NCBI RefSeq assembly: GCF_006345805.1 | Contig: NW_021831752.1 | Span: forward strand, 124,001-188,000 | Reading direction: 5' to 3' | DNA from: Octopus sinensis | Lineage: Eukaryota | Length of the DNA: 64,000 nucleotides | Made by a program: the position numbers and the translations under genes | Notes under the pieces: generated by a model | The model's input: only the letters and a program-made list of their open reading frames with translations | What the model was told of the DNA's origin: nothing | Database searches by the model: none | Part shown: in pieces, positions 29,059 to 62,780 of the stretch | Layout: every line of letters starts with the position of its first letter | Position numbering within the stretch: position 1 is the stretch's first letter

Positions 29059-29850
29059 CTAAAAAATAGCAAAAAAACCAACCATAAACCCGACAGAAAA
29101 ACATATATGAGCCACAACCACGAATGAAACGACCACAAGTCCCAAAAAATTATTCCGATTCGAGAGGGACCAAAAAGAACAACCCAAAACCAAGCACGTG
29201 ACAAAACAGACAGCAACAAGACTAACCCAGGACAGCCACTGAACGTGAAAAACAAGCACAATCTACAATCCCATCAGAAAACTCTCCAAACCGTCAGTGG
29301 AATAAACAAAAAGAGAGAATACCCATAAAGTGCAAAAATTTCAAAAATATTGAAATCCTGGTAGACCTCCCTGGACCACAAAAATGCGAAAATAACGAGA
29401 GGAATCAGCAGAGGGTAGCCCAGTACTAAGCCAGTGGCAGTGGTCACTGTAATCGAATAAACTGGACTACTTTTATGCATATCATACTCCCATTTCTCCT
29501 CAGGGTAATTACTATGGAAAGTGTAATACGAAGAAAGACTGTCGAAAACACAAACTGAGAATATCAGTGTGATAGAAATCCACAGAAACCCTTTTTTGGG
29601 ATTATTTTCAGGACTATAAACCATAAAGGTCAGGATGGGTATGAATTCGGTCCCTTACTTTTCGGAAAGACGTCGTGGGAAGAAATGATGACCCAATTCG
29701 TTGTATAATAGTCCTCGAGTCAAAATCAAAGTATTGTTGGTAGTATTCCATGCTCAGAATGGACTTGGCCTGTGGTTCGGGCTCTGCTTGCTCAGGCATT
29801 GGCAATTGGATTGACGAAATTCGACCCTCCACTGGGGATTCGACTGATTC
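29059..29850 (-). CDS. YIPF1: Yip1-domain Golgi membrane protein (YIPF1/2-like); start codon uncertain
   Basis: SMEYYQQYFDFDSRTIIQRIGSSFLP..HPDLYG^FLWISITLIF..IFALYGYSLFLFIP..hydrophobic C-terminal helices. Confidence 0.9.
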
Positions 29851-30019
29851 TAATTTTTGTTAACTTTTAATATTTTGTGTGATTAATAAAACGGCTGTTT
29901 AACCATTATTCACTAAAGGAACTTTGTCCATCAGAAACAAGTTGAATATATTATTTGAATTAAATAATATTTTTATAATTAATTATTAAAAATGAAAACA
30001 ACAAATTAAGAACAACAAA

Positions 30020-30390
30020 TTAATTGAATGAGGAATCAGATGTCGTGGTGGTAGTACTCGACTCGTCCGAATCATCTTTTTTGAATTTCTTTTTTTTGCT
30101 AAAATTAAATATTTTGGCATTTTTATGCCTTTTAGTCTTAGACTGGGACCTTGTCCTTGTCCTCTTAGTAGGCGGAGTCATTTTAGTTTGGTTAACACTT
30201 TCTGTAGACTTTCTTTTCGGGGTGATCGAAGTGGTGACCTCATCTGTGGCCTCATTCTCCGTTGATTGTGGTCTCCCAGTGGTTGGAGGGGTCGCCTTCT
30301 TGGCACGTGCTGTTTCTTGTGTTGTTTTTTTTGCTTTCGGTGTCCTGTTGTGATTTAAAAAAATTAGCACTTTGTCTTTTTTTTGACCAT
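30020..30390 (-). CDS. Small Lys/Thr-rich basic disordered protein (~114 aa)
   Basis: MVKKKTK^TPKAKK.. joined in frame by the 26-nt intron gtgctaatttttttaaatcacaacag; several TP/TPKR motifs; acidic-Ser/Thr tail. Confidence 0.55.
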
Positions 30391-30854
30391 TGCACCACTG
30401 GAATTTTTTTAATATTAAGTAATAATTATTTTATGCATTTTTAATAAATAATTTAGTTATATTTAAGACTTTAATTTTTTAATGATATTTTCAGTTAATT
30501 TTCATAATTTTTTTAATGATATTTTCAGTTTAACATGTGCTATTTGACATTGCTGGTTTCCAATAAAACAAAATAGCATCTCTATACCCAAAGAGTCCCT
30601 TAATAAATCAAAATTAACTTAATTAAACACATAATTATATTCTGTGGTTATTCATATTCGACTACATCTATGATAAAATGTGTCAGACTGAACAAAAATG
30701 TCAAAAATAAGAACACACAAGCAATACCACTTATTTTCCCACTTGTCATTTAAATCAATTATTTAAGTATAAAATGTGTCAGAATTAGTCATAAATAACA
30801 AGGAATGCAATTAAATTAATAAAATCAACAAGAAAATTAGCTTAATCAAAGTCC

Positions 30855-31332
30855 TTATTTATCCAAAGAATCGTCGAGAAGTAACTTGTGTTTTCTAAGC
30901 TTCTCCTGCAAAGCCTAGAAGGGACTGCTGACCTTGTGATGCTCAATGGCCTCCTCATGGAACTTGATTTCACTTTCATGTGATTCCTTCAGTTTCTTCA
31001 GCTGTTCGGCTTGCTGATGCCATTATACACACTCAGTACAAGTTTACGGAAATACTGCTCTTCCATTGTGTGTGCTCTCTTGCCCATCGACCCCCCTGCT
31101 TCCCTGCAGTGGTTACTTTGGTTTATTGTACTTGATTGAGCCTCCTCCACCTCCTCCCTACAGGTTTATTGAGGGAATTACTTTGCCTGCTCCTGAACCT
31201 GATTCTGGCACGAAACTTGACATTTTTATAGTTTGTGTGAATAAGTTTTTTGACTTTCTATATTATTATTATTGTTTTATTTACACAACATTTTAACAAA
31301 AAAGTAATATACCTAATTAAACCGCACAACAT
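30855..31332 (-). CDS. ATP5IF1: Mitochondrial ATP synthase inhibitory factor IF1
   Basis: MLCGLIR^KSKNL..GSGAGK^GGGGGGSI^EAGGSMGKRAHTMEEQYFRKL^QAEQLKKLKESHESEIKFHEEAIEHHK.. Confidence 0.92.
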
Positions 31333-31439
31333 GAAACAACACAACAATTAATTTATTATAAATTTATATAAAACTAAAAAATTAAACAAATCTTATAATA
31401 TAACTATTTAATCAAGGAAGAAGAATCATTAGCAATTAA

Positions 31440-32380
31440 TTAAGGGTGTAGATAGGGAGTGACATTAACAGGGACGAATATATACTCCCCCTGCTTCTCA
31501 TTACTCTCTCTCCCAGTCTCCCCAGTCTACTCTCCCACAAACATGCCTACCTGCCCACTCGCCTGCCCCATTTCGAGCCCTTCCCAATACCACAGTGGAT
31601 GTCCCTACAGTGAGAGGACAGCCTTACTGGGGACGTCAGGTATATTCCTGGTGAGTATATGCAGTATACGGGCACACGGTCGTCTGTTTTGGGGGCTGGG
31701 GAATATAGGGGATGACTACTTGTGTTTCGGACTGATCTGAAGGTCTCGTTGGATGTGACCTTAGTCCATTAGGGGGGACATTACCTTTCGATATGCCTTG
31801 TCGATTACTATTCTCTTGTTCTTAAAGGTTAGGCCATCAGGCTAGGCATTATTATATTGGTTAACTGAGTGCTCGTTCAGAATTGAGGATGCCACTTCTG
31901 AAGATTCAAAAGTCACAAAACCAAATCTATTTAAATTAATTATTAATTTTTTATTTATTTTAATATTGATTTTTTAGTGGCGGGAATTAAAATCAGAATA
32001 TATTATGTTGTGTGGGAATTTCCAATTTATAAAATGGCTATTTATATGGTAAAATTAAATAAATTAATTAATTAAAAATGCAAAGAACCCTTTAAAATTC
32101 CCAGCCTGATCACAAACAATATTCACATCCTTCACTTTCCCAAATTTATTAAAGAAATTCTTAAGGTCCCTCTCCAGGAATTCCTGAACAATGTGAGGAC
32201 ACAATTCACCGTCTCAAAAGACCCGAGGCCAGTCACGAATATCCTTCCTTCAACTTCTTTGGAGTTCTCTGGAGCTTCATAAATAATTTTCGGACTGTCT
32301 TTTCCCCATTGCTGACTAAAATTGCGACAGTCATTCCGCCCTCCTTTTATAGGCCAATTGTACGCCGTAACTCGCGCCAT
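31440..32380 (-). CDS. BOLL: Boule/DAZ-family RRM RNA-binding protein; start uncertain
   Basis: GRIFVTGLGSFET^EFLERDLKNFFNKFGKVKDVNIVCDQAGNFKG^FGFVTFESSEVASSIL..LTFKNKRIVIDKAYRK resembles the Boule RRM; Pro/Tyr-rich tail. Confidence 0.75.
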
Positions 32381-34010: not shown

Positions 34011-34069
34011 CTGAAGTGAAGAATAGAGTTCCACAGATGTCGAAATGGTCTGATCATTTACAATTTATA

Positions 34070-34660: not shown

Positions 34661-34691
34661 TTAGAACCAAGATCACCGTCCAAAACATAAA

Positions 34692-35189: not shown

Positions 35190-35990
35190 AACCCCGCTGC
35201 TGGTAGCAGATTGGAGTGAATGGGTTTTTAATTTTTTCGACTTTTTAATTTCATATTGGTGACATAGATGTAAATGCAAGCATTTGACCACTTCGTTATG
35301 GCGTCTAAGGTTGAGGCTGTTAAGCATTTGCCCACATCTGATAGCAAGGTGATCGACGGTCTTCTTGGATGAGTTGCAGTGGCTGCATTTATTCTCTCCG
35401 TTGCTGAAAAACAAGTTCAGTCTTGCAACAGGCACATATTTGCTTCAGTCCGGGGAAAATTGTTTCAATGAATTAACCACCCGCAAGCCTCATACACGTC
35501 AATTTCAGTATTCTTTAGACATTCGAACAAAATAGAGTTGAAGCTTCTTTCGATTTTTTACATAGATATTCACGTTGAAGTTTTACCAGATCCGATATTT
35601 TCAATTCATTTACGTTTTCATTGTATTTTCGAGACAAGAATTCTGCGATAGTGGCCGTATGCGTTTTCTTTGAATTGATGGCGAGTAGAATTTCTGCTCT
35701 TTTTAGGGAAGTAGCTTGCCTTATATTTCAAATCAGCATAAAATTGAAGAATCATTCTCTCCTCTTTATTACTGACTGACTCCCGGCCTCTCCCAAATTC
35801 CTTTCTTGGAAGATAAAATCTTTCTTTGTTTGCGGGTTTCAAGTGGATATGATTGTCCATAAGAATTCGACGAATAGCCAAAAACACAACTACAGTAAAA
35901 GATTTCCAATAATCTAGTGAAATAATGTGATTACTCATCGATATAATGTGATCAACTAATGAAGAGTAGCCCCATAAAAATATGACCACA
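35190..35990 (-). mobile_element. R4/NeSL-like (RLE-type) non-LTR retrotransposon fragment
   Basis: IRRILMDNHIHLKPANKERFYLPRKEFGRG and KCSHCNSSKKTVDHLAIRCGQML..RRHNEVVKCLHL (CCHC knuckle plus RHN motif). Confidence 0.8.
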
Positions 35991-36059
35991 ATTACAATTC
36001 CTAATATAATCTGTCGAATTATAAAAACTAAAAAAGTGCAAATAAACCATCATTAAAAA

Positions 36060-37013
36060 TCATCCAAAATGAGTATTCGAACACATAGCATCAACCAATT
36101 TATTCTCGACTAATTTGAGAGCAGGCAATGTCATAACCAGTCCCTCATGTTTGAGCACACTATACACATTCAGTCCTACACATCACACTACTGACTACCA
36201 TAATATGGCATAACATTGAACTGGTCTGTCCCCTCCACACACCTCCCCACACTCCCCTCCATCCAATCATTCCTTAAATATCACAAATACTCAACTCTGT
36301 TATAAATAACACAGAATGACCCCATCCCCGTGCTTCCACCAATCTTCTGAGGTACTAAAACTTTATTTTATAGCCAGACCTGAGGATCTTCCGAAGGGAT
36401 ATTCAAATTCTCGACCACATGGAACAATTTCTGACATCCTCAACACAAATACCTGCCTGTGCTTGACCGTCAAGGCAACTCGGAGACCGAGGACCCTTTT
36501 AAAGAAGGGCAGCATATAAAAGTGACTCTTAGGACCCCTGGGACCCACAGCAGCCCCTCCTTTGACCCAGTGGGGGGCTCGGACACTGCCCTGGGCTGCC
36601 CGACCCATCCGCTTTTGGGGCCACGGTTTTCGACCTCCTCCGCGGAGTTCTGCTCGGGAGGGCAAGAAACGGTAATCCTGGGACTGAGGGACAGGAATAC
36701 AATCATGCGGTATTTGGTCTGCCAGACTACATTGTTGTGGAGAATGTCGATCCTGTGGGTCACGTGTGGAGGCTACCGGGGATATGTGGCGAAGATGTCG
36801 GGATTTAGGTCTGTTATGCCTGTGAAGTTTTGGTGGATTGTGTCCACGGATTCGATCCAGGCTTGTTCGTGTGGACGTGGTGTGGCTGAGGGTTGTCTAA
36901 TGTGGGGGTTGCTTACTTTGAGGTGTTGTGAAGTGGGGAAATGTGGTTGAGAGGGCTTTGGTTAGATTTTGGCTAAGATTTGAAACTGATGACCACGTGA
37001 ATAGACATTTCAT
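36060..37013 (-). CDS. MRPL4: Mitochondrial ribosomal protein uL4m
   Basis: [18 protein letters not shown]^[70 protein letters not shown]. Confidence 0.95.
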
Positions 37014-37994: not shown

Positions 37995-38997
37995 ATGTGT
38001 GATGATAGTGATGATGGCTGGATATTTGGCTGCGGTATTTAAAAAAATACAAAAAAATAGATTTTTCCGACTTGAAAGGAGACGAGATGGACAATTTCAC
38101 CACCAGATCATCCACCAACATCCCAGACTTCCAAACCTCAATAAAGTAACATTTTTCCCTCCAAAAACCAAGGAAAATTCCAGAAATAACAGTAAAGTAT
38201 AAAATGAACCACAAATCCCGCGGATATGCCTTAATAATCAACAACCGTGACTTTAACTCAGGAACCCACATGTCATCCCGGAAGGGCACTGACCAGGATG
38301 CCCAAAGTCTGTACAACCAACTAGTCGGCCCGATGGGATTCGACAAAACACGTGTAAAAGTATTCAACAACGTCACTGCCTGTAATATGAAAAAATTGTG
38401 CAATCAAGGTGGTTTCCGTTTTTAGAGTGGTTAGCCTCGTTGGTTGACCACAAGGACTGCGACATGTTTTTTTGCGCGGTTTTGTCCCACGGAGATTCGT
38501 CCTATGTTTATGGGGTGGATGGGCCTCTCTCACTCTCCAGTCTACTCGAGCCATTTAAGGCTGACGTATGTCCCACTTTGGGGGGAAAACCGAAGGTTTT
38601 TTTAATTCAGGTGGGTTTATTGGGGTATTTGAGGCATGTCGGGGAGACCGGCTGATGAAGGCCGCGGAGGTTTACGACACAATCGACAGTTCTGCCACGA
38701 CCAGCAGGATTCCGTCCGAAGCTGATTTTCTGACTGTTTATTCGACGGTGGAAGGTTTGTGGGGTGAGAGATTTGGGGTATTTTTCGTGGAGGAATTCGT
38801 CACACGGGTCGTGGTTTATTCAGGCGTTTTGTGCGTGTGTGGCCGAGTTTTGTGGAGAGTTGGATTTGGTGAAAATTGTTTCCCGGGCTTCACATTTGGT
38901 GGCATTTGAGTTTGAATCGAACGCGGAGGGGATTTTTGGTGGTAAGAAACAGGTCCCTCAAATGGTCTCCACCCTGACTAAAGATATTTACTTGTGA
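37995..38997 (+). CDS. Effector caspase (caspase-3/7-like)
   Basis: Short prodomain with DEMD; RGYALIINNRDF; catalytic SHG and Q^ACRG (23-nt intron 38611-38633); GYFSWRNSSHGSWFIQ; KQVPQMVSTLTKDIYL. Confidence 0.95.
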
Positions 38998-39009
38998 ATT
39001 GTCGTCTAA

Positions 39010-39760
39010 CTTTGTCTAATTATATCCCATCATGGACATACATTTAGGCAGATAGGCGAATATAGCTCAAAAAATGGGGAGTAATTAGCTTTGTATTAGG
39101 AAAAAGAGGTGTATGAGTAGGCTTACTATCCGTCCCTGATTAGCCGGGATATAGTTTTGCATATCACATTTGTAATGTCATTCTGGAATACCACATGGGA
39201 TATTTACATTCTCAAAGCACTCAACAGCGACTCAAGATAACTCTGGAGAATATCACTATTCCATCTCATAGTCTGTTTTAATTTATAAGCTACCTATGGA
39301 ATGTTCTGAAAGTGATTTTGTAAAAAAAAGTCCTTGTTTCTAATCACAGCGTGTAAATATACAATCAAGTAATTTCTCCTACTTTCGTGAGATTTGCCTT
39401 TTCCTCTTTTAAAAATCAGATTAACTCTCATCCGAGAAATTCCAACAAAAACCCGATACAGTATTTCTTGACCTTGTTTCCGATAAAGGGGCTTTGAACT
39501 ACAAGCGGAGTTTCCTATCTTTTTTAGGGAGTCAAAAACTCGCTCAGAGATATGGTGATCCAAACAGAGAAATTTAGGTTTGTAATTAAAAGTGCAGTCT
39601 AATTGAATTCCTCTTCGTCGGCACCAAAGAAGAACAGTTAAGTCGCTAGAGGAACATGGGGGAGGATTCAAAGTATATTGAAGGCCGATATTACCTAACC
39701 TAGTTAGTTTGACTTTTTTTCTTGTAGTTAACATTTGCCTGAAATAGATTGTATGTCATA
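39010..39760 (-). CDS. Uncharacterised gene (146-codon exon plus further exons)
   Basis: ORF 39294-39734 followed by open segments (MRWNSDILQSYLESLLSALRM; YKANYSPFFELYSPIC); no family recognised. Confidence 0.4.
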
Positions 39761-44369: not shown

Positions 44370-44489
44370 CATTTCTCTACTAATCATAATTCTTTATTTG
44401 TTGATATTTTGGTTTGTTAGGAGTATTGGTTGAGAATTAGTTATTTTAGTTAATATTTTAAATTGGCTGTTAAAGTCGATTCACGGAGG

Positions 44490-48613: not shown

Positions 48614-50079
48614 ATGACTGTGGTGCGTCCTGGGATTATAACATGGATTGTATATATAAAAGTATAAATTAAAGCAGCCATTTTTTACAAAAAACCTACG
48701 AAGGTCACTAAACTTGCAAGAATATAACAGCAAGGACCTGATGAAGAAATACGGCGTTTCTGTCCAAAGATTTCGAGTTGCCTCCACCCCAAAGGAAGCC
48801 ACAGAAGCTGCAAAATATCTGCTCAACACTGACGCCAAAGAACTCGTCATAAAAGCCCAAATTCTGGCAGGCGGACGAGGAAAGGGTCACTTTGACACAG
48901 GCTACAAAGGCGGTGTCAAAATAACAAAAAAGTATCATATTTTGAGACTATTTTAAATAGTTTGGCCGATGTGGAGGACATTGCCACCAACATGTTAGGA
49001 AATAGACTAATCACTAAACAAACCCCTTCCGATGGAGTTTTAGTCCAAAAAGTGAGTCCACTCACCCACAATGCCCTCTCAGATCACAGTAGCGGAAGCT
49101 CTGGATATTCACAAGGAGAAATACGTGGCCATCGTTCTGGACAGATCCACTTGCTGTCCAGTCATTGTGGGCAGTCCTTACGGGGGAATGGACATTGAGC
49201 AGGTCGCTGAACAATTTCCAGAAAAAGTGTTCAAAGTTGGGCTGATTTGTAGTTTTGTAGGAATATATCGACATTTCTGAAGGGATTACGTCGATTCAGG
49301 CCACCAGAATGGCAGAAAACCTTCAATTCAGTCCTTCTCAGATCTCTAGTGTACAGAAAATGTGGTATTGGTAGGCTGCTGATCAAATAAAGCGACTTTA
49401 TGACATGTTTTGGCGAATTGATGCCACACAAGTGGAGGTAAACCCACTCGGAGAGACCCCCGAAGGACGAGTCGTGGCTTTTGATGCCAAAATAAACTTC
49501 GACGACAATGCTTTCTACAGACAGAAGGAGATATTCGAAATGGACGACAAAAGTGAGTCCAGTCTGGCTGAGAGGGAGGCCGAGAAGTTTGGATTCAACT
49601 ATATTCCCACGGAAGGGAACATTGGGTGTCTGGGTAGGGGTGTTTTGTCAGTGGCCAGTCAACGGGGCTGGGTTGGCTATGGCCACAATGGACGCAATCA
49701 AGCTGTATGGCGGAATGCCGGCCAATTTTCTGGATTTGGGGGGTGCGGTCAGACAAGATGTGATCGGAGAGGCGTTTAGGATTATTTTATTCGATAAGAA
49801 TGTTAGTTTTGTGTGATATGTGCAGGTTAAAGTGATATTTGTGAATGTGTTTGGTGGGATTGTGAATTGTGTTGGGGTGGCGAAGGGATTGGTTGAGGCA
49901 ATTGACAAGATGGGAGTGAAAGTGCCCTTGGTGGTTCGTTTGTTGGGTTGTTTGTGCTGTTCAGTGTAGGGACTGGAGCGGATGAAGCAAATGATGTTAT
50001 TAAAAAGTCGGGTTTGAACGTCTACACTGTCCGGGGGTTTGACGAGGCTGCTCAAAAATCTGTCCAATTATTGGACTGA
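48614..50079 (+). CDS. SUCLG2: Succinyl-CoA ligase beta subunit, GDP-forming type, mitochondrial
   Basis: [88 protein letters not shown]. Confidence 0.93.
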
Positions 50080-50711
50080 ATAAACTTTATTTGGTTGTTT
50101 TCATTAATAATTCTGCTTATTAATATTTCATGTTAATATTTGTTTCGATATAAATTGAATGGAGCATTATAGGTTTAATCGACGCCTAATGACTTTTTAG
50201 GTGATTTTTACATTCTAAAAATTGTGTTGATTATTTTTAAATGATATTGTTAGTCGGATTATTTTTTGTCACCTTAAAAATGGCAACAAGAGGGGTTTTA
50301 CTGTAAGTTTTATGTGGCATTGAAACAATATTATTGCGGATTTAAATGTTTTATCATGTGAAAAAAATAAACATGAAAAGAAAAAGTAACTCAAAAAATA
50401 GTTGAGAGCCTGAGAATCAGCTCAACTGCGTATTGAATGGCAGTTTCCGCGAAGCACGGCTGTTTGTTTTTGAAGAGATTCTCCTACCAATGTCAGTGAG
50501 GAGTTAAGTCGCTGCCTTGCCGACGATTCCTGAGATTTTGAAGCCAAGGGGTGGAAGCCGTTCAACTAAATTGTCGATTCGTACCGGCAAGGGTGGGGCT
50601 AGCAGATGTCTAAGCCAAAGCATAAACAAATCCCGATCCGTAAGGATTCATCGTCCAGTATTCTCCAAATACACAGCTCGGCACACAACAATTGTTATGC
50701 CACTACAAGTA

Positions 50712-50860
50712 CACGCTCAACCAGACACAGTTCACGTTACATGAATTGCAAGTTTCATTCAGAATTTTAATGTTCAAATGTATCGCAAATCACATTACTT
50801 ATCGCAATTTGCTACGCCCTTCATCAATGCACGAGTCAAGTGATCCACCGTTTAGGGTAA
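50712..50860 (-). rRNA. 5.8S rRNA, possibly pseudogenic
   Basis: Minus strand AACGGTGGATCACTTGACTCGTGCATTGATGAAGGGCGTAGCAAATTGCGATAAGTAATGTGA..TGTCTGGTTGAGCG. Confidence 0.85.
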
Positions 50861-51024
50861 TTTAAAAGTAGCAACAAGACATGGAAAATTATGCTTGGAT
50901 GAAACAGCTAACAATAATGCTGAAACAAGAAACAGCAACACTCCTTACTTTATAACTATTTCTAGCTGCGAACAATATCAACAACCATCCCACACGGTAT
51001 CCAAGCACACAAATAAAAAGGACT

Positions 51025-51126
51025 AACCTTGTTACGACTTTTACTTTCTTTAAATGAGTAGGCTTGGGTGTCTACTCGCATGCTATAGCACACGATCCAA
51101 CAACCTCACCAAATCATTCATCGGTT

Positions 51127-51159
<33 letters not shown>

Positions 51160-51582
51160 TGTAATCATTGGAGGCTAATGACCTGCAATTACTAGGAATT
51201 CCTTGTGCACGAGGAATAATTACAAGCCTCGATTCCTGCCACGAAGAAATTTTAAGGCTTAGTTCGCTTTTCCAAGCAAAATCCACTCTGTTTTCAAACC
51301 CACTTCGAACGTCTAAGGGCAATCACAGGCCTTTTATTGCTCATTTTCAGATGTTTTTCACACTGATCCTTCTTAGTAGTCGAACAACTAGAATCGAACG
51401 ACTATAGTTAGTAAGTCTGAGTAAGTCTGAGTCTCGTTCGTTATCGGAATAAACCAGACAAATCACTCCACCAACCAACAACGGCCATGCACCACTACCC
51501 ACAGTATCAAGAAAAAGCTATCAGTCTGTCAATCCTCACTGTGTTCGGCCCGGGTGAATTTTTCTGCGTTGAGTCAAATTGA

Positions 51583-51634
<52 letters not shown>

Positions 51635-52585
51635 AACCATACTCCCCCGGAGTCCAAAGACTTTGGTTTCCCGGAAGCCACCCGCTAATGTATTCAAATA
51701 TTATCAGCAGAGTGCTAGTTGGCATCGTTTATAGTTGGAACTACGACAAGATCTAATCGACTTCGATACTCCAACTGTCGTTCTTGATTAATGAAAACAT
51801 TCTTTGCAAATGCTTTCACTGTAGTACGTCCTGCATCGATCTACGAATTTACCTCTAACGGAGCAATACGGATGCCCCCTGGCTGTCTCTGTTAATCATT
51901 ACTTTTGCTATCGTAACCAATAGAAAAGTCTTATTCTATTATTCCATGCTTAAATATTCAAGCAAAATGCTTGCTTTAAGCACTCTATTTTGTTCAAGGT
52001 AAAGCCATAGTCTAACTGTAGCAATGGCCTACTAGCACACCGAGATCCAACTACGAGCTTTTCAACTGCAGCAATTTTAGTATACACTATTGGAACTGGA
52101 ATTGCCACGACTGCTGGCACCAGACTTGCCCTCCAATTGCATTCATTAAAGCTTTTACAGCTATCTCTTTATGCCAAAAGTGGATAATTTACGCACCTGC
52201 TGCAATCCATAGATCTGGCAGCCATTTCTCATTGCCCCTCTCCGGAATCGAACCCTGATTCCCCGTTACCCGTTGTAACCACAGCAAGCCACTACCTCAC
52301 CGTCGAAAATTGATGGGACGGACATCTAATTAATACGTCGCAGCCACTGCCTGTGATCAGCAAGTTTATCCAGAGTCAACTAATTCTAATAATTGCGCTT
52401 TGAGAAGCTATACGCATTATTAGCTCTAGATTTACAACAGTTATCCACCGTCGTGTGAGATTATCAAGTAAGTTATGTCCGATTTAATGAGCCGTTTGCG
52501 GTTCCGCTCATTAGAGAGCATGAACTTACACTTGCATGGCTTAATCTGTAGGATAAGCATGACTATTGGCAGGATCAACCAGCTA
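51025..52585 (-). rRNA. 18S (SSU) rRNA, short and apparently degenerate
   Basis: CTGGTTGATCCTGCCA at the 5' end, GTGCCAGCAG, TTAAAGGAATTGACGGAAGGGCACCACCAGGAGTGGAG, TGCCCTTTGTACACACCGCCCGTC, GTCGTAACAAGGTT at the 3' end; terminal helix 45 absent. Confidence 0.92.
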
Positions 52586-54629: not shown

Positions 54630-56226
54630 GTAAAGGTCGACGAAAAAATTGTTATTATTGCGATCGCTAATTTTTTTAAACAGAAAAAATTATCAGGAAT
54701 GGAATTCCATACTCTCAGTATTTCGTCTTGTGAGGTCTTTTCATGTGAAACTGATAATTGATCATTTTCAATTATTTCCAAAGTATTTTTTAAATCAACA
54801 AATTTTTGTTTCCAAATATAACTTGAATGTAGATCTATTAGCTGCATTTCCAGATCTTCAAAATTTATCAATTCTAGAATCTTCAGATAAAGTTTATCGA
54901 ATGTAATTAAATCTGGATATATTATAAATTTGGATGTTAGGAAAAATAGTTTTAATTCAACAAATCTCGAAGAAAATTCATGAATTACTGACTGAATTAA
55001 CGATAAAAATTCTAGAATTTGTTTGGATAGATCTATTTTTTCATGGAGAAGTAAATCTAATTTTAGGAATTTTTTAGTATTTTTAAAAAATTTAAAACTG
55101 TTGGAAAGTACTTCAAGGTTAAAAACAACCAATTTGGCCTCAAATGCCTGAATTGAATCAATCGTGTGATATAATAATTCATTACCACCTTGCAAATTCA
55201 AGTTCAATTCATTTAAATGGCACGTAAAATCTGCCAAAAATGTTAATTTAAGGATCCATCCAGGGTCCATTAATTGTGGATACTGATCAATTACTTTTTC
55301 ACTCTGTAAAAATATTTGCACTTCATCCAAACACTGGACAAATCGTTCAAGAACTTTTCCACGGCTCAACCATTTTACGTTGTTATACATCAGTAATCCT
55401 TTTAGCAGATTATAAATATTTATAAAAAACCAATATGTACTGAATTTACTTTACTTTCGTCAACACAAAGGGAAATGAAATTACAAGACTTAATATCTTT
55501 ACTTTGTTGAAGAGAGATATTTTCACTCATTCTTTCCTTTACTGTGTTTCGTGAAAGGGGAAATTTTTTGTATTTTTTCTATAATTTTTGGATTTTCTTT
55601 GAATAAGAATGGTGCACATTTTATCCACTCTTCTTTTATATATTGACCATCAGAAAAAGGCTTCCTATGCTTCGCAATAACATGAGAAATAACGTAACTA
55701 GCACTGATTGAATCAGATTGACTGTTAACGAGTTTTCTGAGTGATTCTGATTGTTGAGAGCTATTTTTAACTAAAATGCAATTGTTTCTCTTTGTTCATC
55801 ATTAGTTTTCTCAGATAATGATTTGTGAATAGTTTGAAAATGGCCTTTTATAAAAGATGTTTGAAAAGCAATCATAACATACATAAAGCTTTGTCTCCTA
55901 AAGATAAAATATTAACCTCTGTTCAGCAATCCATATTCTTTAATTTATGAATTTTGAAATGCTCTGCAATTTGATTTGGCTTGCTTTGATCTTTGACTAA
56001 CAGTATGCTTAAGAACTGACATTTAATAATATAACGTGTAGCGTGTTAAATTATAGGAGGGTTAACCTTATTAAAAATTATTATAATACCATTTTAATAA
56101 AACAAAATGTTAAAATTATTAAAAAGAATTAATAGTTTAAAAAAGAAATTCAAAATTTCAAAATATGCCACTAAAAGTTTCTAAAGTGCCACCCATGCCA
56201 CGCGTGCCAGTGTTTAGCCATCCCTG
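54630..56226 (-). mobile_element. hAT (SPIN/GTF2IRD2-EPM2AIP1-like) element, 3'-truncated
   Basis: 5' TIR CAGGGATGGCTAA at 56226; ORF NVKWLSRGKVLERF..LTFLADFTCHLNELNLNLQG..LEMQLIDLHSS. Confidence 0.88.
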
Positions 56227-56234
56227 ACCTAGAT

Positions 56235-56400
56235 CGACACTCCTGATTTCCTTGAACAAAGACTTAAATCGTTTGAAAAAATTTAAAAACAGCGGACGAC
56301 CTGAACAAATTGATATCACTTCCATTCAACAGTGAAAGATAAAAAAAACTAACTGTAAATATTGCTTCTTCGAGTGTTGCACATGCGGGTCATTATGGCT
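56235..56400 (+). mobile_element. RTE-like LINE tail remnant
   Basis: TLLISLNKDL..LKTADDLNKL parallels the C-terminus of the LINE at ~45.0 kb. Confidence 0.5.
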
Positions 56401-56665
56401 GTTGTGCAATCATATCTCAAGAAAAATCTAAAAAAGTTCAGTAACAAGCTATTCGTAGAGATTTGTGAAATTAATCAATTGAATTAAAACTAATCTATGA
56501 GAGAAAAAAATTAATATCACAAAATAAAGCTTAATATTTTGAAAAAATAGGTTGAAAGACAGACTACCATAACACTTTATTTTCGACCGTTTTAGCAATT
56601 TTAAAGCCATGAAACTCACAAATAATTATTAATCAAATCAAGATAAATAAATTTAAAAGATGAAA

Positions 56666-58072
56666 CTAATTTTCCAAAAAAATAATTTTCGGATCCTCCC
56701 AGGAATATTCATCATAACCAAAATGGCCATAACAAGCAGTACGCTTAAACATGGGACTACGTAAATTCAAACTCCTAGAAAAATAAACCCCAAAAATACT
56801 TGATTATGGCTCCTGGCCTCAAATCAAAGTTTTGCTTGACCAACTGAACCAACCTGGCCTCGGACACCATAGAAGACCCATACGTGAACAAAGAAAGAGA
56901 AGTAGGCTCAGCCACACCAATTGCATAGGAAATCTAATTTGACTAACTCAATCGACCTGCACAAGAACACGTTTACACAGCCCTGACTTAACCAAAGATT
57001 TGGCCACCCAACGAGCAGCATAAGCCCCCGATCTGTCTACTTTGGACGAATCCTTCCCCGACAAAGCACCACCGCCATGTGACCCCCACCCTCCATATGT
57101 GTCCACAATAATCTTCCGACCAGTCAAACCAGCATCAGCCTACAACAATCCAATAACCCTCCCCACCTGAGGACCACCGACCACAAAACTCCCAGAAGGC
57201 TGAAGATACAGCCTGATATTATCAGTGACATATTTTGTAGGAATCACCGACATTATAATATCCCTAAGCTGACTCCGCATAAACTCCAAATCCACTGAGG
57301 GGGCATGTTGGACTGACAACACTACACTATGCACAGAAAGAGGAACCAACCCCCCTCCCCTGCACTCATATTCCACAGTCACCTATAAAATAACACAAAA
57401 AATAAACCTGACTTTTACAGTCTGGACGAATCCAACTATGTTTCCCAGAGCGTCTCCGATTGGCCACTTCTCTTACAAGTTCGTGGGCAATATTACAAGT
57501 AAGTGGCATACAGTTCTCAGTCTCGTCTGTGGCATATCCAAACATGAGTCCCTTTTTTATTGGTTATAAAAAACTTGATCTCCAGCGCCTATTTCTTCTA
57601 ATAAATCATCTTCGGACTCTTCGTGGAACACTCCTTTGTGGATTTCAGGACTTTGGTCCTCAATTGCTAATTGGACGTTGCAGGAGTCAAATCCAATTCC
57701 TTTTTCGGCAGAATCGTATCCAACATCTTTGATTGTCTGGCGAACCACTTTGAAATAGTCAATTTTAGCACTGGACGTGACTTCTCCGAATACCATCACC
57801 ATTCCTGTCTTGACAATACATTCTGTGTGTGAGGAAAGGAGATTACCGCAGGCTACTTGGGAATTGGGGTCTGCAGTGAGGAAGGCGTCGAGGACTGAGT
57901 CGCTGATTATGTCGCATAGTTTGTCTATGGGGGTAAATTGGTTGGAAAGTGACCAGGATGGCCTTCTCCGACTGATTCAGATGTGAAAAGAAAACGAGTA
58001 CCATCAGGACAGGATAATTGCATTATTTTTGTGCACGTGAATTATTTTATTAATTAACTTGAAATTACACAT
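56666..58072 (-). CDS. MAT: S-adenosylmethionine synthase (methionine adenosyltransferase); start uncertain
   Basis: [13 protein letters not shown]^[22 protein letters not shown]^[21 protein letters not shown]^[28 protein letters not shown]-like end. Confidence 0.97.
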
Positions 58073-59426: not shown

Positions 59427-59539
59427 CAATAAAAATACTTTTGATATTAATATTTAAAGGTACCCTTTTTGTTTTATTCTATTCCATTTAATAATCAACC
59501 TACAAAATCAGATCAAATCAGTTTTTTTGTTTTTAAAAA

Positions 59540-60440
59540 CGTGTGAAAGAGTAATTTTGATTGAAATATGAGTGTCGGTTTTTCGACAGACGCTATGTCT
59601 TTCTTTGTGGGAATTCTAAGAGGGAACGCTTGGCTACTTTCAGCACCCACTCCAGGAATGAATATAAATTGATAATATGAGCTTATAATTACTCATGATT
59701 AAAAAAATTGAGAAAAGGCACTTAAAATATGACATTCGGGCAACTCAGTCAATAAACTCAGTTAAGCCTAACTTGCAAGAGGCTCCTAGCGATTAAGCAT
59801 TAGCTGGAAATTGATATAAATACATAGGACATCCTAGGAAGGTTACTTTAGTAGAGCAAAAGATCCGTATTAATATAGATAATGTAAATCTAATTTGTGA
59901 GACTGAGTGTTCTTTAGAGAACGGCCTTGGAATGATGGAAAGTGTCAATTAAAATGATCAAACATTAATCTGATACTATTATACCAATTCTGACAGTTTT
60001 ATAACTGTTGTCATTGAATAGCTCACTGTCTTAAAAGATCATGTGATCAATAGGTTAATCCTCTCAGTTCCTTTAAACCTTCTCAAAAAATCCTCGACAC
60101 AAAAATCCAGGCAAAAATTGAAATTCATACTTCCAAGATCCGGTTGAGTAGTTTCCCTAACGAAAAATCAAAAACTCATTTTCTTCCTAATGGAGTCCCT
60201 CAGTGATCTCCCTCATCACTTGATCAGTTTAATTAATTCTTCAGTTTAATGTCTAATTCTCTTCTATGTTGATGATATCAGCCATTCTAGCAAGGTTTTC
60301 CACCTTTTGTATAATTTTATGAAAAACATAAAACACTTTGAGTCAGACTTATCATTTTTTGAATAAAATATAAATATCGTCTCAATTACAACATTCCAAG
60401 ACTCACTTTCCATTCTGCCAGCTCTATTAACAGTTTTTAT
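59540..60440 (+). mobile_element. Heavily decayed LINE reverse-transcriptase remnant
   Basis: KIRLSS..FLPNGVPQ resembles the RT GVPQG motif; many stops. Confidence 0.3.
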
Positions 60441-61153
60441 CGTTTTAGAATAGCCGAAAACAGCACAAATACTAAATTAATACTCATTTCAAATGTTTTA
60501 GATAAGAATTATTAACTAAACTTGTTCATTTGTTCAAATTTGGCTGCAAAAACTTTTTTGTGAAATTTTCTGCGTTTTATTGCTAGGAAGAACCAGGGAG
60601 TATCCCCGCTACAATTATTTTGTGTTATTAAAGCCTATTTGTTTTATTTTAATCACAAACTAAAAACTAGATTGACTAAAAATGGGTTGGGTGGTTCTGA
60701 AATAAAAAATGAACATTAATATTTCTGATTGTTGAATCTTTAGGCAAATTATAGTCGATTCCGATAAAAAATTGAAATTATTGACGAAATCAGAATTTGC
60801 ATTAAAATGGAGGTTTATGATAAAATAAAGTTTGGACGACATTTTTATCACTGGAAAGGCTATCGAAATATTAAAGGAGGACAGAAGACTAAAGTTTTTA
60901 TTATTAAATTTATTTAAAATATTAAATTAATTAAAAATTTTAACTATATTAAATTAAGTTATAAAAAAGTTGGAACTATTGTATTTTAACTTGGCCATTG
61001 AGTGTTTTTATTTCCTATTATATTTACGTAAATATAATCTCAATTTCAAATCCAACAATATTATATCTTTTTACATTTAATATAAAAAATATTTAGTAAT
61101 AATACATTTTAATATTAGTATAAATCCTCAATCATTCCCTACTAGCTTGTTCA

Positions 61154-62780
61154 ATGAGTACTGCCAAACCACGGAAAAAAACCCAAGATACACCCACGTG
61201 CGTTGTATGCCACACTGGCGGGCACCTATTAGACTGTACAAAGTGCAGACGACTGACCCACACACAGTGCAGGTTATCCGATTCATCTTACCCTTCTAGG
61301 AGGAACATGAGCAAAAAAATAGCCAACATAAAGAAATGGAATTGTACTGAATGTTTGTCGAATAATCCTGAGGTGATTAAAACCTTCTATTTCTTCTAGA
61401 ACGGAGGATTGTCCTCTAAAAACAACAATTCAGCCACACTAGCACGGATTCTGTCCTCCAGAGCCTCCTTGAATGAGAATTTTAGTCACATTCTCGGCAA
61501 AAAACTCACCTTCCCGATGATGTCTGAGGTCGGTCCTAAAAAAGGCTCAAATAAGTAGATCCTGACCAACAAAATGGCAAATTGGACTACTTCCAACTTC
61601 CAATGCCCAGAACCTCTAATCCGTGAATATATCGACTCTGTCGACATCCGTCCTAAGGAAACACGGTCCCTTAAACGTATATGACTGAATCATGTCAAGG
61701 AAACGGTCATCCGAAACGTGTCATTCGGAGGACTGCCAACTCGGAGGAAACTCGTGATTCAATTTGTCACTTTTGTTGCAAGTCAGTTATTCATAAAATG
61801 GCAAAGGAACTGTCAATTGGGAGAGTTATGTCGATGTGATTACTGCAATTTGTTATTTCATGGAGATTGTCTTGAGTGTGGATATCCTCCACCGCGGAAT
61901 AACGTGCCGTGGATGTGTCCTCTCCACCCTGAACATGTCGTGGTTAGTTGTTGCCCCACAAGTCATAGGATGCCTTATTTCCTACCAGAAGTATCACAAA
62001 GAGGACTAAAAATATGAGGAAATATGCTCGTTGTTCTGTCAATGCTGACCACGTTTGGACAAGATTTAGAACAACAGGCCGTAATCCTGCACCCCAGCCA
62101 GGGAGTGGGTCTCCTTACAAGGTTGGCTGATATGGGGTCATTGTAGGTCCCTCAAGTAGTGAAGGCTATGTATAAAGGCACATCACGTGTTTTTAATGAG
62201 GAAATAAATCAGGAAATGACTGAAAAGAGTAATCAGGGGATTAAATTACTGGCATATGAGAATGGTAGGTTAAAAGGTAAAATGTAGTATTAAAATGCTC
62301 GTCGGGGGCGTATTTGTTATATTATGAACGTCCAGGGAATCTGACTCGATTCTATCCGATCGAATTTGAATTGACGATTGGGACAGGTTAGAATAATGTG
62401 TTTGTAATGATTAGAGGACAGTTGTAGTGTCAGACTGGATAGACTTTATCCAGCATGTCGAAGAATATCCCAAACACATGCCTCAGTGTTTTACGACTCA
62501 TATACAGACACATATGAACTAGTGAACTATAGTCGATTTGGGACTATTGTGGATCAGATTGCTTATTGCAACGGACATTCACGAGTGGTTTGTTGTTGAT
62601 TTATTGTAGGATGACGATGTGGGGTGTATGTGTAGTCCTCAACATGATTTGGGCGTGGAAGGGAACGAGGAAGCTGCCCATATTCTCCATGGATCCTCCA
62701 TCAAAGTATTTTATTCAGAGTTTATTGTTTAGATTGGATGCGCTGAATTTATATTCTCGATTTTGTCTGAGAATGAGTGA
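61154..62780 (+). CDS. PHF12: PHD finger protein 12 (Pf1)-like: two PHD fingers plus a C-terminal FHA-like domain
   Basis: PHD1 [26 protein letters not shown]; PHD2 [25 protein letters not shown]; [42 protein letters not shown]^IGCAEFIFS. Confidence 0.88.

What the first reader, a model, noticed from the sequence alone, without database searches (positions are those of the whole stretch)
29059..62780. Strand-symmetric C/A-to-G/T skew inversion centred inside a subset of genes
In YIPF1, boule, MRPL4, caspase, GOT2, SUCLG2, MAT and PHF12 the coding strand is C/A-rich in the 5' half and G/T-rich in the 3' half, at wobble positions and in introns alike. Example: GOT2 intron gtactcattctatactactaaacaag versus gtttggtgttattggggattttag. 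For minus-strand genes the top strand reads the same way: MRPL4 has ccctccacacacctccccac at ~36230 and gtggtgtggctgagggttg at ~36880. The rule is therefore orientation-independent, with the top strand C-rich on the left and G-rich on the right. DOCK, SLC6 and the guanylate cyclase are AT-rich and show no such switch. This resembles a bidirectional replication origin, a recurrent break or resection site, or divergent transcription at each gene centre. It could also reflect selection for the transcript ends to pair with each other. Gene-sized amplified or extrachromosomal units are a further possibility. I am not aware of a description of this pattern at single-gene scale.
Basis: partly seen in the sequence, partly recalled or inferred. 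Interest (0 to 1): 0.85.

Follow-up and report, generated by a model that had tools for sequence, protein, structure and literature searches.

The report
Strand-bias flip inside small animal genes
In a subset of short, GC-richer genes of this very compact animal genome, the sense strand is C/A-rich near the start and G/T-rich towards the end, even in introns and silent sites; this is a real mutational footprint and an extreme animal version of a pattern already described in yeasts.

Summary
In five homology-modelled genes (MRPL4, caspase, GOT2, SUCLG2, MAT), third-codon, 4-fold and intron sites all go from C/A-rich to G/T-rich along the sense strand. YIPF1-like and PHF12-like genes follow it at third positions. 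All seven genes exceed 5000 random intervals of the window. AT-rich DOCK, SLC6 and guanylate-cyclase genes and GC-rich transposon pieces show nothing.

Four corrections apply. "Orientation-independent" is a tautology, because a C-then-G pattern is its own reverse complement. The switch is not central: it lies 250-590 nt after the ATG, at 18-47% of the CDS in 7/7 genes. The skew stops at the ATG and 100-570 nt past the stop. The RRM ("boule") gene shows two cycles split by a long AT-rich intron.

Neutral composition on the two sides is nearly reverse-complementary. That implies one strand-asymmetric, transition-type pressure hitting opposite strands.

The pattern is not undescribed. McLean & Tirosh 2011 reported opposite GC skews at 5' and 3' gene ends in unicellular fungi. 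New here are the animal host (dicyemid-like, inferred), the co-flipping TA skew and the extreme strength.

Best explanation: transcription-linked mutation bias in germline-expressed genes. The cause of the sign flip is unresolved. A break at the gene centre has the wrong polarity, and specific 5'-3' RNA pairing is not supported.

The parts
28671..29859 (-). YIPF1-like gene (ORF blocks 29055-29859) plus its 3' flank. The sense strand is C/A-leaning at 29591-29859 and G/T-rich at 28671-29591. The skew switch is near 29591.
Evidence: ORF frames. Keto fraction at third positions is 0.46 -> 0.66 -> 0.75. Cumulative minimum; HMM segment.
31440..32380 (-). RRM ('boule'-like) gene with 8 exons. It shows two skew cycles. 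Exons 1-2 are G/T-rich. A 162-nt AT-rich intron follows (31927-32088). Exons 3-6 are C/A-rich and exons 7-8 G/T-rich, with the second switch near 31605.
   Evidence: Manual in-frame model of 210 aa. Pfam RRM_1 E = 1.3e-10. Keto fraction at third positions per exon and intron G/C counts.
35857..36982 (-). Skew domain of MRPL4 (CDS 36060-37013). The top strand is C/A-rich at 35857-36569, which covers the 3' part and about 200 nt of 3' flank. It is G/T-rich at 36570-36982, the 5' part. The switch is at 36569.
   Evidence: PDB uL4m homology; model; statistics; HMM; raw sequence.
38002..39186 (+). Caspase gene (CDS 38002-38997). The C/A-rich zone is 38041-38407 and the G/T-rich zone 38408-39186. 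The switch is near 38400.
   Evidence: PDB caspase-3/7 homology; model; statistics; extrema and segments.
42999..44471 (+). GOT2 (CDS 42999-44369). It is C/A-rich from the ATG to about 43251 at all sites. Neutral sites stay C-leaning to about the middle of the gene. It is G/T-rich to about 100 nt past the stop.
   Evidence: PDB mitochondrial aspartate aminotransferase, E = 1e-104; model; statistics.
48614..50360 (+). SUCLG2 (CDS 48614-50079). The switch lies between the C-rich intron at 49052-49082 and the G/T-rich intron at 49236-49260. The G/T-rich zone runs to about 280 nt past the stop.
   Evidence: PDB succinyl-CoA synthetase beta, E = 4e-91; model and intron sequences; statistics.
56096..58023 (-). 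Methionine adenosyltransferase (CDS 56666-58023). The top strand is C/A-rich at 56096-57436, which is the sense-G/T-rich 3' part plus 570 nt of 3' flank. The sense-C/A-rich 5' part is 57436-58023.
   Evidence: PDB MAT, E = 6e-107; model; third-position Fisher p = 3e-13.
61124..62811 (+). PHD-finger (PHF12-like) gene, known only as ORF blocks. Keto fraction at third positions is 0.44, 0.42, 0.39, then 0.53, 0.55, 0.72. The switch is near 61717.
   Evidence: Pfam PHD hits: 2.3e-4 and 8e-3. Third-position values. Cumulative minimum. z = 4.5. The 3' limit of the gene is uncertain.
16838..22399 (-). Control: the AT-rich DOCK gene, which has no skew gradient.
   Evidence: Pfam DOCK-C2, E = 5e-16. 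GC3 is 0.29 and third-position keto skew +0.01 over 1025 codons, with no trend across 11 exons.
24946..27931 (+). Control: the AT-rich receptor guanylate cyclase gene, which has no skew gradient.
   Evidence: Pfam Guanylate_cyc, PK_Tyr_Ser-Thr and ANF_receptor. GC3 is 0.30 and third-position keto skew -0.05.
50711..52585 (-). 5.8S and 18S rRNA genes. They are not part of the phenomenon, but they explain the C-rich top strand at 50611-52886 inside the reported span.
   Evidence: Rfam RF01960, 1128.8 bits, and RF00002, 100.3 bits.

Best explanation
This is a mutational footprint tied to the transcription unit of a subset of genes. The genes are short, GC3-rich and housekeeping or germ-cell in function, so they are probably expressed in the germ line. 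A transition-type, strand-asymmetric pressure has driven neutral sites close to a skewed equilibrium. Compositionally it looks like loss of C and A and gain of T and G on one strand, as in deamination of single-stranded DNA. Over the 3' 55-80% of the gene and its 3' UTR, the depleted strand is the non-template (sense) strand. Over the first 250-590 nt after the ATG, it is the template strand.

This is the same kind of phenomenon as the 'opposite GC skews at the 5' and 3' ends of genes' of unicellular fungi. Here it appears in an animal and in a much stronger, keto/amino form.

Shown: the skew is at silent and intron sites; it is bounded by the gene; it is nearly mirror-symmetric; it is absent from AT-rich genes and from transposons; and it shifts amino-acid usage.

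Inferred: that it is transcription-coupled and limited to germline-expressed genes.

Speculative: that the physical cause of the inversion is exposure of opposite strands. Promoter-proximal antisense transcription or antisense R-loops would act in the 5' zone, and sense-strand displacement during elongation and termination in the rest.
For: 1. Third-codon, 4-fold and intron sites all carry the gradient in 5/5 modelled genes. Second positions carry it least, which is the order expected for mutation filtered by selection.
2. Introns are the most extreme. In the 5' part they are G 6% / C 27%. In the 3' part they are G 27% / C 6%.
3. The composition of the 3' part is nearly the reverse complement of the 5' part. 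Chi-square is 10-15 for that comparison, against 64-146 for the same-strand comparison.
4. The skew starts at the ATG, peaks at +100 to +200 nt and again 100-300 nt before the stop, and fades 100-570 nt after the stop. Upstream flanks are flat.
5. The switch is always in the 5' half (7/7), so it depends on gene orientation.
6. Skewed genes have GC3 of 0.43-0.52, against 0.29 in the unskewed, probably tissue-specific genes. Their introns are not comparably GC-rich (0.25-0.41), which suggests codon bias of expressed genes.
7. N-terminal parts are enriched in amino acids with A/C-rich codons and C-terminal parts in those with G/T-rich codons, OR 1.86, p = 1e-6.
8. Published precedent exists, with a transcription-linked reading and the note that in animals such skews occur only in germline-expressed genes (PMC3315797).
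Against: - No expression, TSS or R-loop data exist for this organism, so the link to transcription rests only on where the skew starts and stops.
- The sign flip lies inside coding exons, hundreds of nt from any plausible promoter. No known transcription-coupled process predicts a near-mirror inversion there.
- The RRM gene restarts the cycle after a long AT-rich intron. That fits 'units bounded by AT-rich spacers' better than 'one cycle per transcript'.
- Flanks may be too young, being transposon-rich, to record a regional process. Their flatness is therefore weak evidence.
- All skewed genes lie in the right half of the window and all unskewed ones in the left. A regional effect cannot be separated from a gene-class effect.
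- The fungal pattern has a uniform AT skew, so the two phenomena may not share a cause.
Confidence: 0.45

Rival explanations
1. Recurrent DNA breaks, meiotic or otherwise programmed, occur in the AT-rich, presumably nucleosome-free spacers that flank these genes: promoters, 3' ends and the long RRM intron. Resection in the 5'->3' direction runs inwards from both sides and exposes the 3'-ending strands. Their deamination writes C/A-richness on the top strand to the right of a break and G/T-richness to its left. The intragenic switch is simply where the influence of the two flanking break zones balances.
For: - The polarity is correct without extra assumptions. At human hotspots ssDNA lies left of the break on the forward strand, and the flanking 2 kb show strand-asymmetric C>N and A>N mutations peaking off-centre (PMC7615360).
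- The scale of the zones, 250-1400 nt, matches resection tracts.
- Near-mirror composition is expected.
- The model explains the extra cycle in the RRM gene after its 162-nt AT-rich intron.
- It explains a flat 990-nt MRPL4-caspase spacer flanked by opposite skews.
- GC3 is raised in the same genes, as biased gene conversion would produce.
Against: - No mirrored outward skew is seen in upstream flanks. Mean keto skew is -0.09 to 0 from -800 to -1.
- Pooled neutral sites fit a step better than a ramp, AIC 1852 vs 1867.
- Introns are not GC-enriched as biased gene conversion would predict.
- The effect is far larger than any hotspot footprint known.
- From my own knowledge: the analogous fungal pattern is strongest in Candida albicans, which has no regular meiosis, and dicyemids reproduce largely asexually.
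Confidence: 0.2
2. Selection acts on the (pre-)mRNA rather than mutation. A G-poor 5' part and a C-poor 3' part are each nearly three-letter alphabets that fold weakly. Alternatively, C is avoided towards the 3' end to tune RNA polymerase flow, which is the adaptive hypothesis proposed for fungi.
For: - Introns, which are part of the pre-mRNA, share the skew, and it stops at the transcript borders.
- The 5' 250 nt of the CDS fold more weakly than the 3' 250 nt in four of five genes, and equally in SUCLG2.
- The adaptive hypothesis was published for fungi (PMC3315797).
Against: - C avoidance does not explain the co-flipping TA skew or the near-exact reverse-complement symmetry.
- The two halves are compositionally complementary, which favours long-range pairing rather than avoiding structure.
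- No specific complementarity is found.
- The skew costs amino-acid changes.
- The AT-rich genes do without it.
Confidence: 0.12
3. A bidirectional replication origin or initiation zone lies at each switch, with the leading strand becoming G/T-rich on both sides.
For: - The polarity is correct: C/A-rich to the left and G/T-rich to the right on the top strand.
- GC and TA skews flip together, and the change is step-like, as at bacterial origins and at human skew jumps.
Against: - The skew ends at the gene borders instead of persisting along the replicon.
- The spacer between the MRPL4 and caspase switches (36569 and 38395) is flat, where fork-direction skew should continue to a midpoint.
- Switches are only 1.8-8 kb apart. 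They sit in GC-rich coding exons with no AT-rich or shared element.
- The switch is always 5' of centre.
- The old AT-rich genes show no replication-type skew of either sign at silent sites.
- The magnitude far exceeds known nuclear replication skews.
Confidence: 0.08
4. Each gene block exists at some stage of the germ lineage as a gene-sized linear, excised or amplified DNA molecule. Its two 5' ends are recessed, so its 3'-ending strands are exposed from both ends.
For: - The polarity and the confinement to the block are as expected, with no outward skew.
- Dicyemids are reported to undergo chromatin elimination, selective amplification and formation of extrachromosomal circles (PMC6543705).
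Against: - That the window comes from a dicyemid is itself an inference.
- The reported rearrangements are somatic, so they would not be inherited.
- The circles described carry only mitochondrial protein domains.
- The window is a contiguous 64-kb stretch with genes and transposons interleaved.
- I saw no terminal repeats at the block borders in the flank sequences I read, but I did not search for them systematically.
Confidence: 0.05

Closest known systems
[quoted passage not shown]
   Same: - The sense strand is C-biased at the 5' end and G-biased at the 3' end, changing sign inside the gene.
- The bias is present at 4-fold sites.
- It extends into the 3' UTR.
- It shifts amino-acid usage between the N- and C-terminal parts.
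- It affects many but not all genes.
- It was interpreted as transcription-linked mutation pressure, with the mechanism left open.
   Different: - In fungi the AT skew is uniform along genes (A>T) and correlates positively with GC skew, giving a purine-type bias. Here TA and GC skews flip together, giving a keto/amino bias.
- In most fungi the strongest C-bias is in the promoter or 5' UTR. Here the upstream flank is flat.
- The magnitude here is far larger, with intron GC skew of about -0.64 and +0.64.
- Here the pattern is seen in an animal, and it is carried by ultra-short introns.
Transcription-associated strand asymmetry of germline-expressed animal genes (sense strand G+T-rich; from my own knowledge: Green 2003, Touchon 2003, Polak & Arndt 2008; a vertebrate survey is PMC2927911)
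   Same: - The 3' 55-80% of each gene has exactly this sign, T>A and G>C on the sense strand, in introns and at silent sites.
- It is restricted to a subset of genes that are plausibly germline-expressed.
   Different: - The known pattern starts at the TSS and keeps one sign along the gene. Here the first 250-590 nt have the inverted sign.
- The skews here are several-fold stronger.
Strand-asymmetric mutation around meiotic break hotspots (Hinch et al. 2023; PMC7615360)
   Same: - Mirror-image C>N and A>N asymmetry on the two sides of a point.
- A scale of kilobases or less.
- Attribution to damage in resected single-stranded DNA.
   Different: - The polarity around a break is the reverse of what is seen around the intragenic switch. 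It would fit only if the breaks lie in the gene flanks.
- The human signal is a small excess of mutations, not a composition driven to near equilibrium.
Skew jumps at replication origins (bacterial oriC; human N-domain borders) and the ssDNA-exposure gradient of vertebrate mtDNA (from my own knowledge; mtDNA example PMC4182315)
   Same: - Keto/amino type of skew, with G and T together.
- The negative-to-positive flip has the same polarity as at an origin.
- The skew is strongest at 4-fold sites.
   Different: - Those skews persist over the whole replicon. Here they end at the gene borders.
- The flips here recur every few kb, inside coding exons.

Membership tests
Intragenic opposite 5'/3' GC skew (fungal pattern of McLean & Tirosh) | Sense strand C-biased at the 5' end and G-biased at the 3' end of the same gene | tested here: met
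   All-site GC skew by gene sixths runs from -0.09...-0.58 in the first sixth to +0.26...+0.51 in the last, in 5/5 modelled genes. Seven of seven genes lie beyond all random intervals.
Intragenic opposite 5'/3' GC skew (fungal pattern of McLean & Tirosh) | Present at 4-fold degenerate sites, so not explained by protein coding | tested here: met
   The trend at 4-fold sites alone is positive in 5/5 genes: Spearman p 0.026 to 8e-6, change-point permutation p <= 0.008; the cruder half-versus-half Fisher test gives p 0.078 (GOT2) to 4e-6. For introns alone Fisher p is 6e-3 to 6e-4.
Intragenic opposite 5'/3' GC skew (fungal pattern of McLean & Tirosh) | Extends beyond the CDS into promoter/5' UTR and 3' UTR | tested here: inconclusive
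   On the 3' side it does: keto skew is +0.26 and +0.14 in the first 200 nt after the stop. On the 5' side it does not: -0.03 to 0.00 in the 300 nt before the ATG.
Intragenic opposite 5'/3' GC skew (fungal pattern of McLean & Tirosh) | Shifts amino-acid usage between the two gene ends | tested here: met
   Residues with A/C-rich codons against residues with G/T-rich codons, N-terminal 40% against C-terminal 60%: OR 1.86, p = 1.1e-6.
Intragenic opposite 5'/3' GC skew (fungal pattern of McLean & Tirosh) | AT skew uniform along the gene (A>T), not flipping | tested here: not met
   TA skew at neutral sites goes from -0.19/-0.30 in the first deciles to +0.45/+0.64 in the last. It flips in each gene.
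Intragenic opposite 5'/3' GC skew (fungal pattern of McLean & Tirosh) | Association with transcription or expression | not testable with these tools
   No expression data are available. The only indirect pointers are high GC3 and the housekeeping or germ-cell identity of the skewed genes.
Replication-origin skew jump | Negative-to-positive flip of both GC and TA skew on the top strand | tested here: met
Replication-origin skew jump | Skew persists along the replicon beyond the gene, independent of transcript borders | tested here: not met
   The skew returns to zero at the ATG and 100-570 nt after the stop. The MRPL4-caspase spacer is flat.
Replication-origin skew jump | Position independent of gene orientation | tested here: not met
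   The switch lies at 18-47% of the CDS from the 5' end in 7/7 genes, on both strands. The two-sided sign test gives p about 0.016.
Replication-origin skew jump | Initiation of DNA synthesis mapped at the site | not testable with these tools
   This needs Okazaki-fragment or nascent-strand sequencing.
Break-hotspot strand asymmetry (resection ssDNA) | Forward strand loses C and A to the left of the break, and the reverse strand does so to the right (G/T-rich left, C/A-rich right) | tested here: not met
   For a break at the intragenic switch the observed polarity is the opposite. For breaks placed in the gene flanks the polarity fits.
Break-hotspot strand asymmetry (resection ssDNA) | Mirror-image skew on both sides of the break zone | tested here: inconclusive
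   It is met across the shared MRPL4-caspase spacer and across the long RRM intron. It is not seen in the upstream flanks of the other genes, which may be young, transposon-rich DNA.
R-loop-prone GC skew of CpG-island promoters and terminators (Ginno et al.; PMC3787257) | Positive GC skew on the sense strand just downstream of the TSS | tested here: not met
   GC skew is -0.16 and -0.29 in the first 200 nt after the ATG.
R-loop-prone GC skew of CpG-island promoters and terminators (Ginno et al.; PMC3787257) | Positive GC skew at the 3' end of genes | tested here: met
   GC skew is +0.41 and +0.43 in the 300-100 nt before the stop and +0.28 just after it. G3+ runs occur at 15 per kb on the G/T-rich strand and 5 per kb on its complement.

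The most novel reading that the evidence does not exclude
The unit of the pattern may not be the transcript. It may be a block of old DNA bounded by AT-rich spacers that are recurrent break or excision sites in the germ lineage of an animal reported to eliminate chromatin and make extrachromosomal DNA. Inward resection from both ends would then expose the 3'-ending strands. Each gene block would carry the chemical footprint of repeatedly having had free, resected ends. The intragenic switch would be the meeting point of the two resection zones.
Probability: 0.12. Interest if true: 0.9.

Novelty: new variant of a known kind. Interest (0 to 1): 0.6.

Why it matters
The cause of the 5'-C / 3'-G inversion in fungal genes has been open since 2011. 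This genome shows the same kind of inversion in an extreme and cleaner form.
- Introns of 18-31 nt are spread along each gene and act as near-neutral probes. They go from almost G-free to almost C-free within about 150-300 nt.
- The two sides are nearly reverse complements of each other. That narrows the possible mechanisms to a single strand-asymmetric process acting on opposite strands.
- The pressure is strong enough to reshape protein composition along the chain.
- It creates long G-rich or C-rich tracts that will affect R-loop formation, gene prediction, codon-usage statistics and phylogenetic inference for an already long-branched animal group.
- If the pattern is genome-wide and tracks germline expression, it offers a sequence-only readout of germline transcription, or of break sites, in an organism that cannot be cultured.

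Tried and rejected
- Unguided splice-aware ORF chaining gave wrong frames, because skewed sequence keeps several frames open. I replaced it with PDB-homology-guided models.
- A PDB search for the RRM gene found nothing. That gene was modelled by hand and checked with Pfam.
- The organism could not be identified. The best GOT2 relatives are only about 55% identical and no self-hit exists. The assignment to a dicyemid rests on intron size, GC content and repeat content matching PMC6736024 and is not proven.
- Literature searches for nuclear skew in dicyemids found nothing.
- I tried to read the direction of recent substitutions from the 96-98% identical duplication 12476-15116 / 45327-48050. Only 24 mismatches exist, mostly clustered at indels, with 9 versus 7 in the two directions. 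This is uninformative.
- Dinucleotide context on the depleted strand shows no APOBEC-like TC signature (TC o/e 1.07). CpG is only mildly depleted, 0.70 vs 0.89.
- No shared motif or AT-rich element was seen at the switches.
- Rejected explanations:
  - A break at the gene centre, because the polarity is wrong.
  - Specific pairing of transcript ends, because duplexes are no better than shuffles.
  - GC-richness as such, because GC-rich transposon pieces are unskewed.
  - Amino-acid composition as the cause, because introns and 4-fold sites carry the skew. By contrast, the Lys/Thr/Pro-rich ORF at 30023-30430 is A/C-rich with no third-position skew.

Full report
**What the window is.** The window is 64 kb with 34% G+C. 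It carries many transposon fragments: Tc5/DDE_1, IS1595-like and hAT-like. It also carries animal genes whose introns are 18-31 nt long. This matches the published Dicyema japonicum genome, which has 36.7% GC, 49% repeats and the shortest introns known in animals (PMC6736024; PMC6543705). The organism's own proteins are not in the protein collection: the best GOT2 relative is 55% identical. The assignment to a dicyemid is therefore an inference, not a result.

**Gene models.** Skewed sequence keeps several reading frames open, so unguided ORF chaining failed. I translated each gene region in three frames and located the homologous stretches against PDB chains.
- Mitochondrial aspartate aminotransferase, 1e-104.
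- Succinyl-CoA synthetase beta, 4e-91.
- Methionine adenosyltransferase, 6e-107.
- uL4m, 8e-37.
- Caspase-3/7, 8e-36.

These stretches served as frame bonuses in a splice-aware dynamic program. The result is five in-frame models: GOT2 + 42999-44369, SUCLG2 + 48614-50079, MAT - 56666-58023, MRPL4 - 36060-37013 and caspase + 38002-38997. The RRM ('boule'-like) gene was modelled by hand (31440-32380, minus strand, 8 exons, Pfam RRM_1 1.3e-10). The YIPF1-like and PHD-finger genes are known only as ORF blocks.

- Along the sense strand of all five modelled genes, third codon positions, 4-fold sites and introns go from C/A-rich to G/T-rich.
- Comparing halves, third-position Fisher p is 3e-5 to 3e-13. 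For 4-fold plus intron sites p is 4e-3 to 8e-8. Change-point permutation p is <=0.0015 in every gene.
- Second codon positions are least affected, as expected if mutation pressure is filtered by selection on the protein.
- Introns are the most extreme class. In the 5' 40% of the genes they are A .37, C .27, G .06, T .30. In the 3' 55% they are A .20, C .06, G .27, T .48.
- YIPF1-like and PHF12-like genes show the same rise at third positions.
- The 3'-minus-5' keto difference of each of the seven genes exceeds all 5000 random intervals of the same length taken from the rest of the window, z = 3.6-5.8.
DOCK, receptor guanylate cyclase and SLC6 (Pfam-confirmed) have GC3 of 0.29 and no trend.
- GC-rich windows outside host genes are no more skewed than the AT-rich background.

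**What has to be corrected.**
1. A 'C/A then G/T' pattern is its own reverse complement. It must read the same on the top strand for plus and minus genes, so 'orientation-independent' is not evidence for a gene-blind process.
2. The switch is not at the centre. Minima of the cumulative keto skew lie at 29591, 36569, 38395, 43251, 49124, 57436 and 61717. These are 250-590 nt after the ATG, or 18-47% of the CDS, and lie in the 5' half in 7/7 genes on both strands. So the pattern does know the gene's direction.
3. The skew is bounded by the transcription unit. It is about zero upstream of the ATG. It is most negative at +100 to +200 nt and most positive 100-300 nt before the stop. It persists through the first 100-570 nt after the stop and then vanishes.
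4. Pooled neutral sites fit a step better than a linear ramp: keto fraction 0.34 then 0.66, change at 0.41, AIC 1852 vs 1867. In SUCLG2 the flip occurs between two introns 150 nt apart.
5. The RRM gene does not show one switch but two cycles. Exons 1-2 are G/T-rich. After a 162-nt AT-rich intron the sense strand is C/A-rich again in exons 3-6, where third-position keto fraction falls to 0.08. Exons 7-8 are G/T-rich.
6. Part of the reported span is something else. The C-rich top strand at 50611-52886 is an 18S plus 5.8S rRNA unit on the minus strand.

**What the anatomy implies.** GC skew and TA skew flip together, so this is a keto/amino skew. That is the type produced by an excess of C>T and A>G transitions on one strand, as in single-stranded DNA deamination.

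The neutral composition of the 3' part is close to the reverse complement of the 5' part. Intron C/G fractions are exactly mirrored. Chi-square is 10-15 for that comparison, against 64-146 for the same-strand comparison. The residual is a uniform sense-strand T>A offset.

The simplest reading is one strand-asymmetric process that acts on the template strand in the first 250-590 nt, and on the sense strand in the rest of the gene and the 3' UTR. The pressure is strong enough to change the proteins. Residues with A/C-rich codons are enriched N-terminally and residues with G/T-rich codons C-terminally, OR 1.86, p = 1e-6.

At a double-strand break, resection leaves the forward strand single-stranded on the left. 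The flanks of human hotspots show C>N and A>N on that strand (PMC7615360). A break at the switch would therefore make the left side G/T-rich, which is the opposite of what is seen. That idea is rejected.

Three scenarios have the right polarity: an origin at the switch, divergent transcription at the switch, and resection running inwards from breaks in the gene flanks.

Against an origin:
- The skew ends at the gene borders.
- The 990-nt spacer between the MRPL4 and caspase switches is flat.
- The switches are 1.8-8 kb apart and lie in GC-rich coding exons with no AT-rich or shared element.
- They are always 5' of centre.

Pairing between transcript ends is not supported. The best 5'x3' duplexes are not better than composition-matched shuffles, z = -0.2 to -1.9. 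The two halves are, however, complementary in composition by construction.

[quoted passage not shown] The sense strand is C-biased at the 5' end and G-biased at the 3' end. The bias affects 4-fold sites, UTRs and amino-acid usage. It is strong in Candida albicans and weak in the model yeasts. The authors proposed either transcription-phase-specific mutation regimes or adaptive C avoidance. They also recall that in animals, transcription-linked skews are limited to germline-expressed genes.

The present case shares these defining features and differs in four ways.
- The TA skew flips as well, whereas in fungi it is uniform with A>T.
- The upstream flank is flat, whereas most fungi have the strongest C-bias in the promoter.
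- The magnitude is far larger.
- The host is an animal whose tiny introns carry the signal.

I found no description of such a pattern in animal nuclear genes or in dicyemids. Those searches cover open-access text only.

**Best explanation and rivals.** I favour a transcription-linked mutational asymmetry in germline-expressed genes (confidence 0.45), for four reasons.
- The skew starts and stops with the transcription unit.
- It depends on gene direction.
- It affects genes that are housekeeping or germ-cell in function and have raised GC3 but not comparably raised intron GC (0.43-0.52 vs 0.25-0.41). This pattern is typical of expressed, codon-biased genes.
- It matches the established reading of the closest known phenomenon.

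The physical cause of the inversion is not shown. Exposure of the template strand by promoter-proximal antisense transcription or antisense R-loops, and of the sense strand further on, is my inference. The G-rich 3' sense strand (G3+ runs at 15 vs 5 per kb) would itself favour sense R-loops. That could make the state self-reinforcing, which is speculation.

The main rival (0.2) is recurrent breakage in the AT-rich spacers flanking these genes, with inward resection. It has the right polarity and scale. It explains the restart after the long RRM intron and the flat shared spacer. But it predicts an outward mirror skew that the upstream flanks do not show. It also predicts intron GC enrichment, which is absent, and the effect size is unprecedented. 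Other rivals are selection on the pre-mRNA (0.12), replication origins (0.08) and gene-sized DNA molecules (0.05).

**Caveats.**
- There is only one window, with seven or eight genes.
- All skewed genes lie right of 28.6 kb and all unskewed ones left of it, so gene class and region are confounded.
- The flanks are transposon-rich and may be too young to record a regional process.
- The exact 5' and 3' transcript ends are unknown.

**Verdict.** This is a real, strong, gene-associated compositional inversion. The claim of no precedent is wrong. It is a new, extreme, keto/amino variant in an animal of a known but unexplained fungal pattern.

Noticed in passing
50711-52585 (minus strand): A complete 5.8S (50711-50859) and a short but full-length 18S (51017-52585; 1569 nt matching all 1831 model positions) lie only 350-630 nt beyond the SUCLG2 3' end. 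No LSU rRNA is detected anywhere in the window, although it should follow the 5.8S where SUCLG2 sits. This is either an orphan or truncated rDNA unit, or an unlinked LSU.
   Followed up: partly
3806-5077: A 95-bp tandem repeat, 13.4 copies, 96% matches, with a T-run and G-run in each unit. It explains the strong G/T skew of 3376-5044, which lies outside the reported span and is unrelated to genes.
   Followed up: yes
12476-15116 and 45327-48050: A segmental duplication in three collinear blocks, 96.7-100% identical at aligned positions. It carries hAT-like and IS1595-like transposase fragments. It links the AT-rich left half and the gene-dense right half of the window as one genome.
   Followed up: partly
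31927-32088 (minus strand): The RRM gene has one 162-nt AT-rich intron among 23-26-nt introns, containing AATAAA-like strings. The skew cycle restarts exactly there, which suggests an internal promoter, a terminator or a break-prone spacer.
   Followed up: partly
30023-30430 and ~30885-31223 (minus strand): Two further small ORF genes without Pfam hits. One is a Lys/Thr/Pro/Ser-rich ORF whose A/C-rich sense strand is due to amino-acid content, with no third-position skew. The other is a purine-rich coiled-coil-like ORF with three putative short introns.
   Followed up: partly
skewed gene zones vs rest of window: CpG observed/expected is 0.70 inside the skewed genes and 0.89 elsewhere. GpC is also low, at 0.75. 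This could reflect gene-body methylation of expressed genes or the skewing process itself.
   Followed up: no
57800-57830 (MAT, minus strand) and 38700-38760 (caspase): MAT carries an 8-residue in-frame insertion (GNLLSSHT) relative to all PDB homologues. It may be an unrecognised 24-nt intron. The caspase model has an uncertain junction around 'TVCGVRDLGYFSW'. Neither affects the statistics materially.
   Followed up: no
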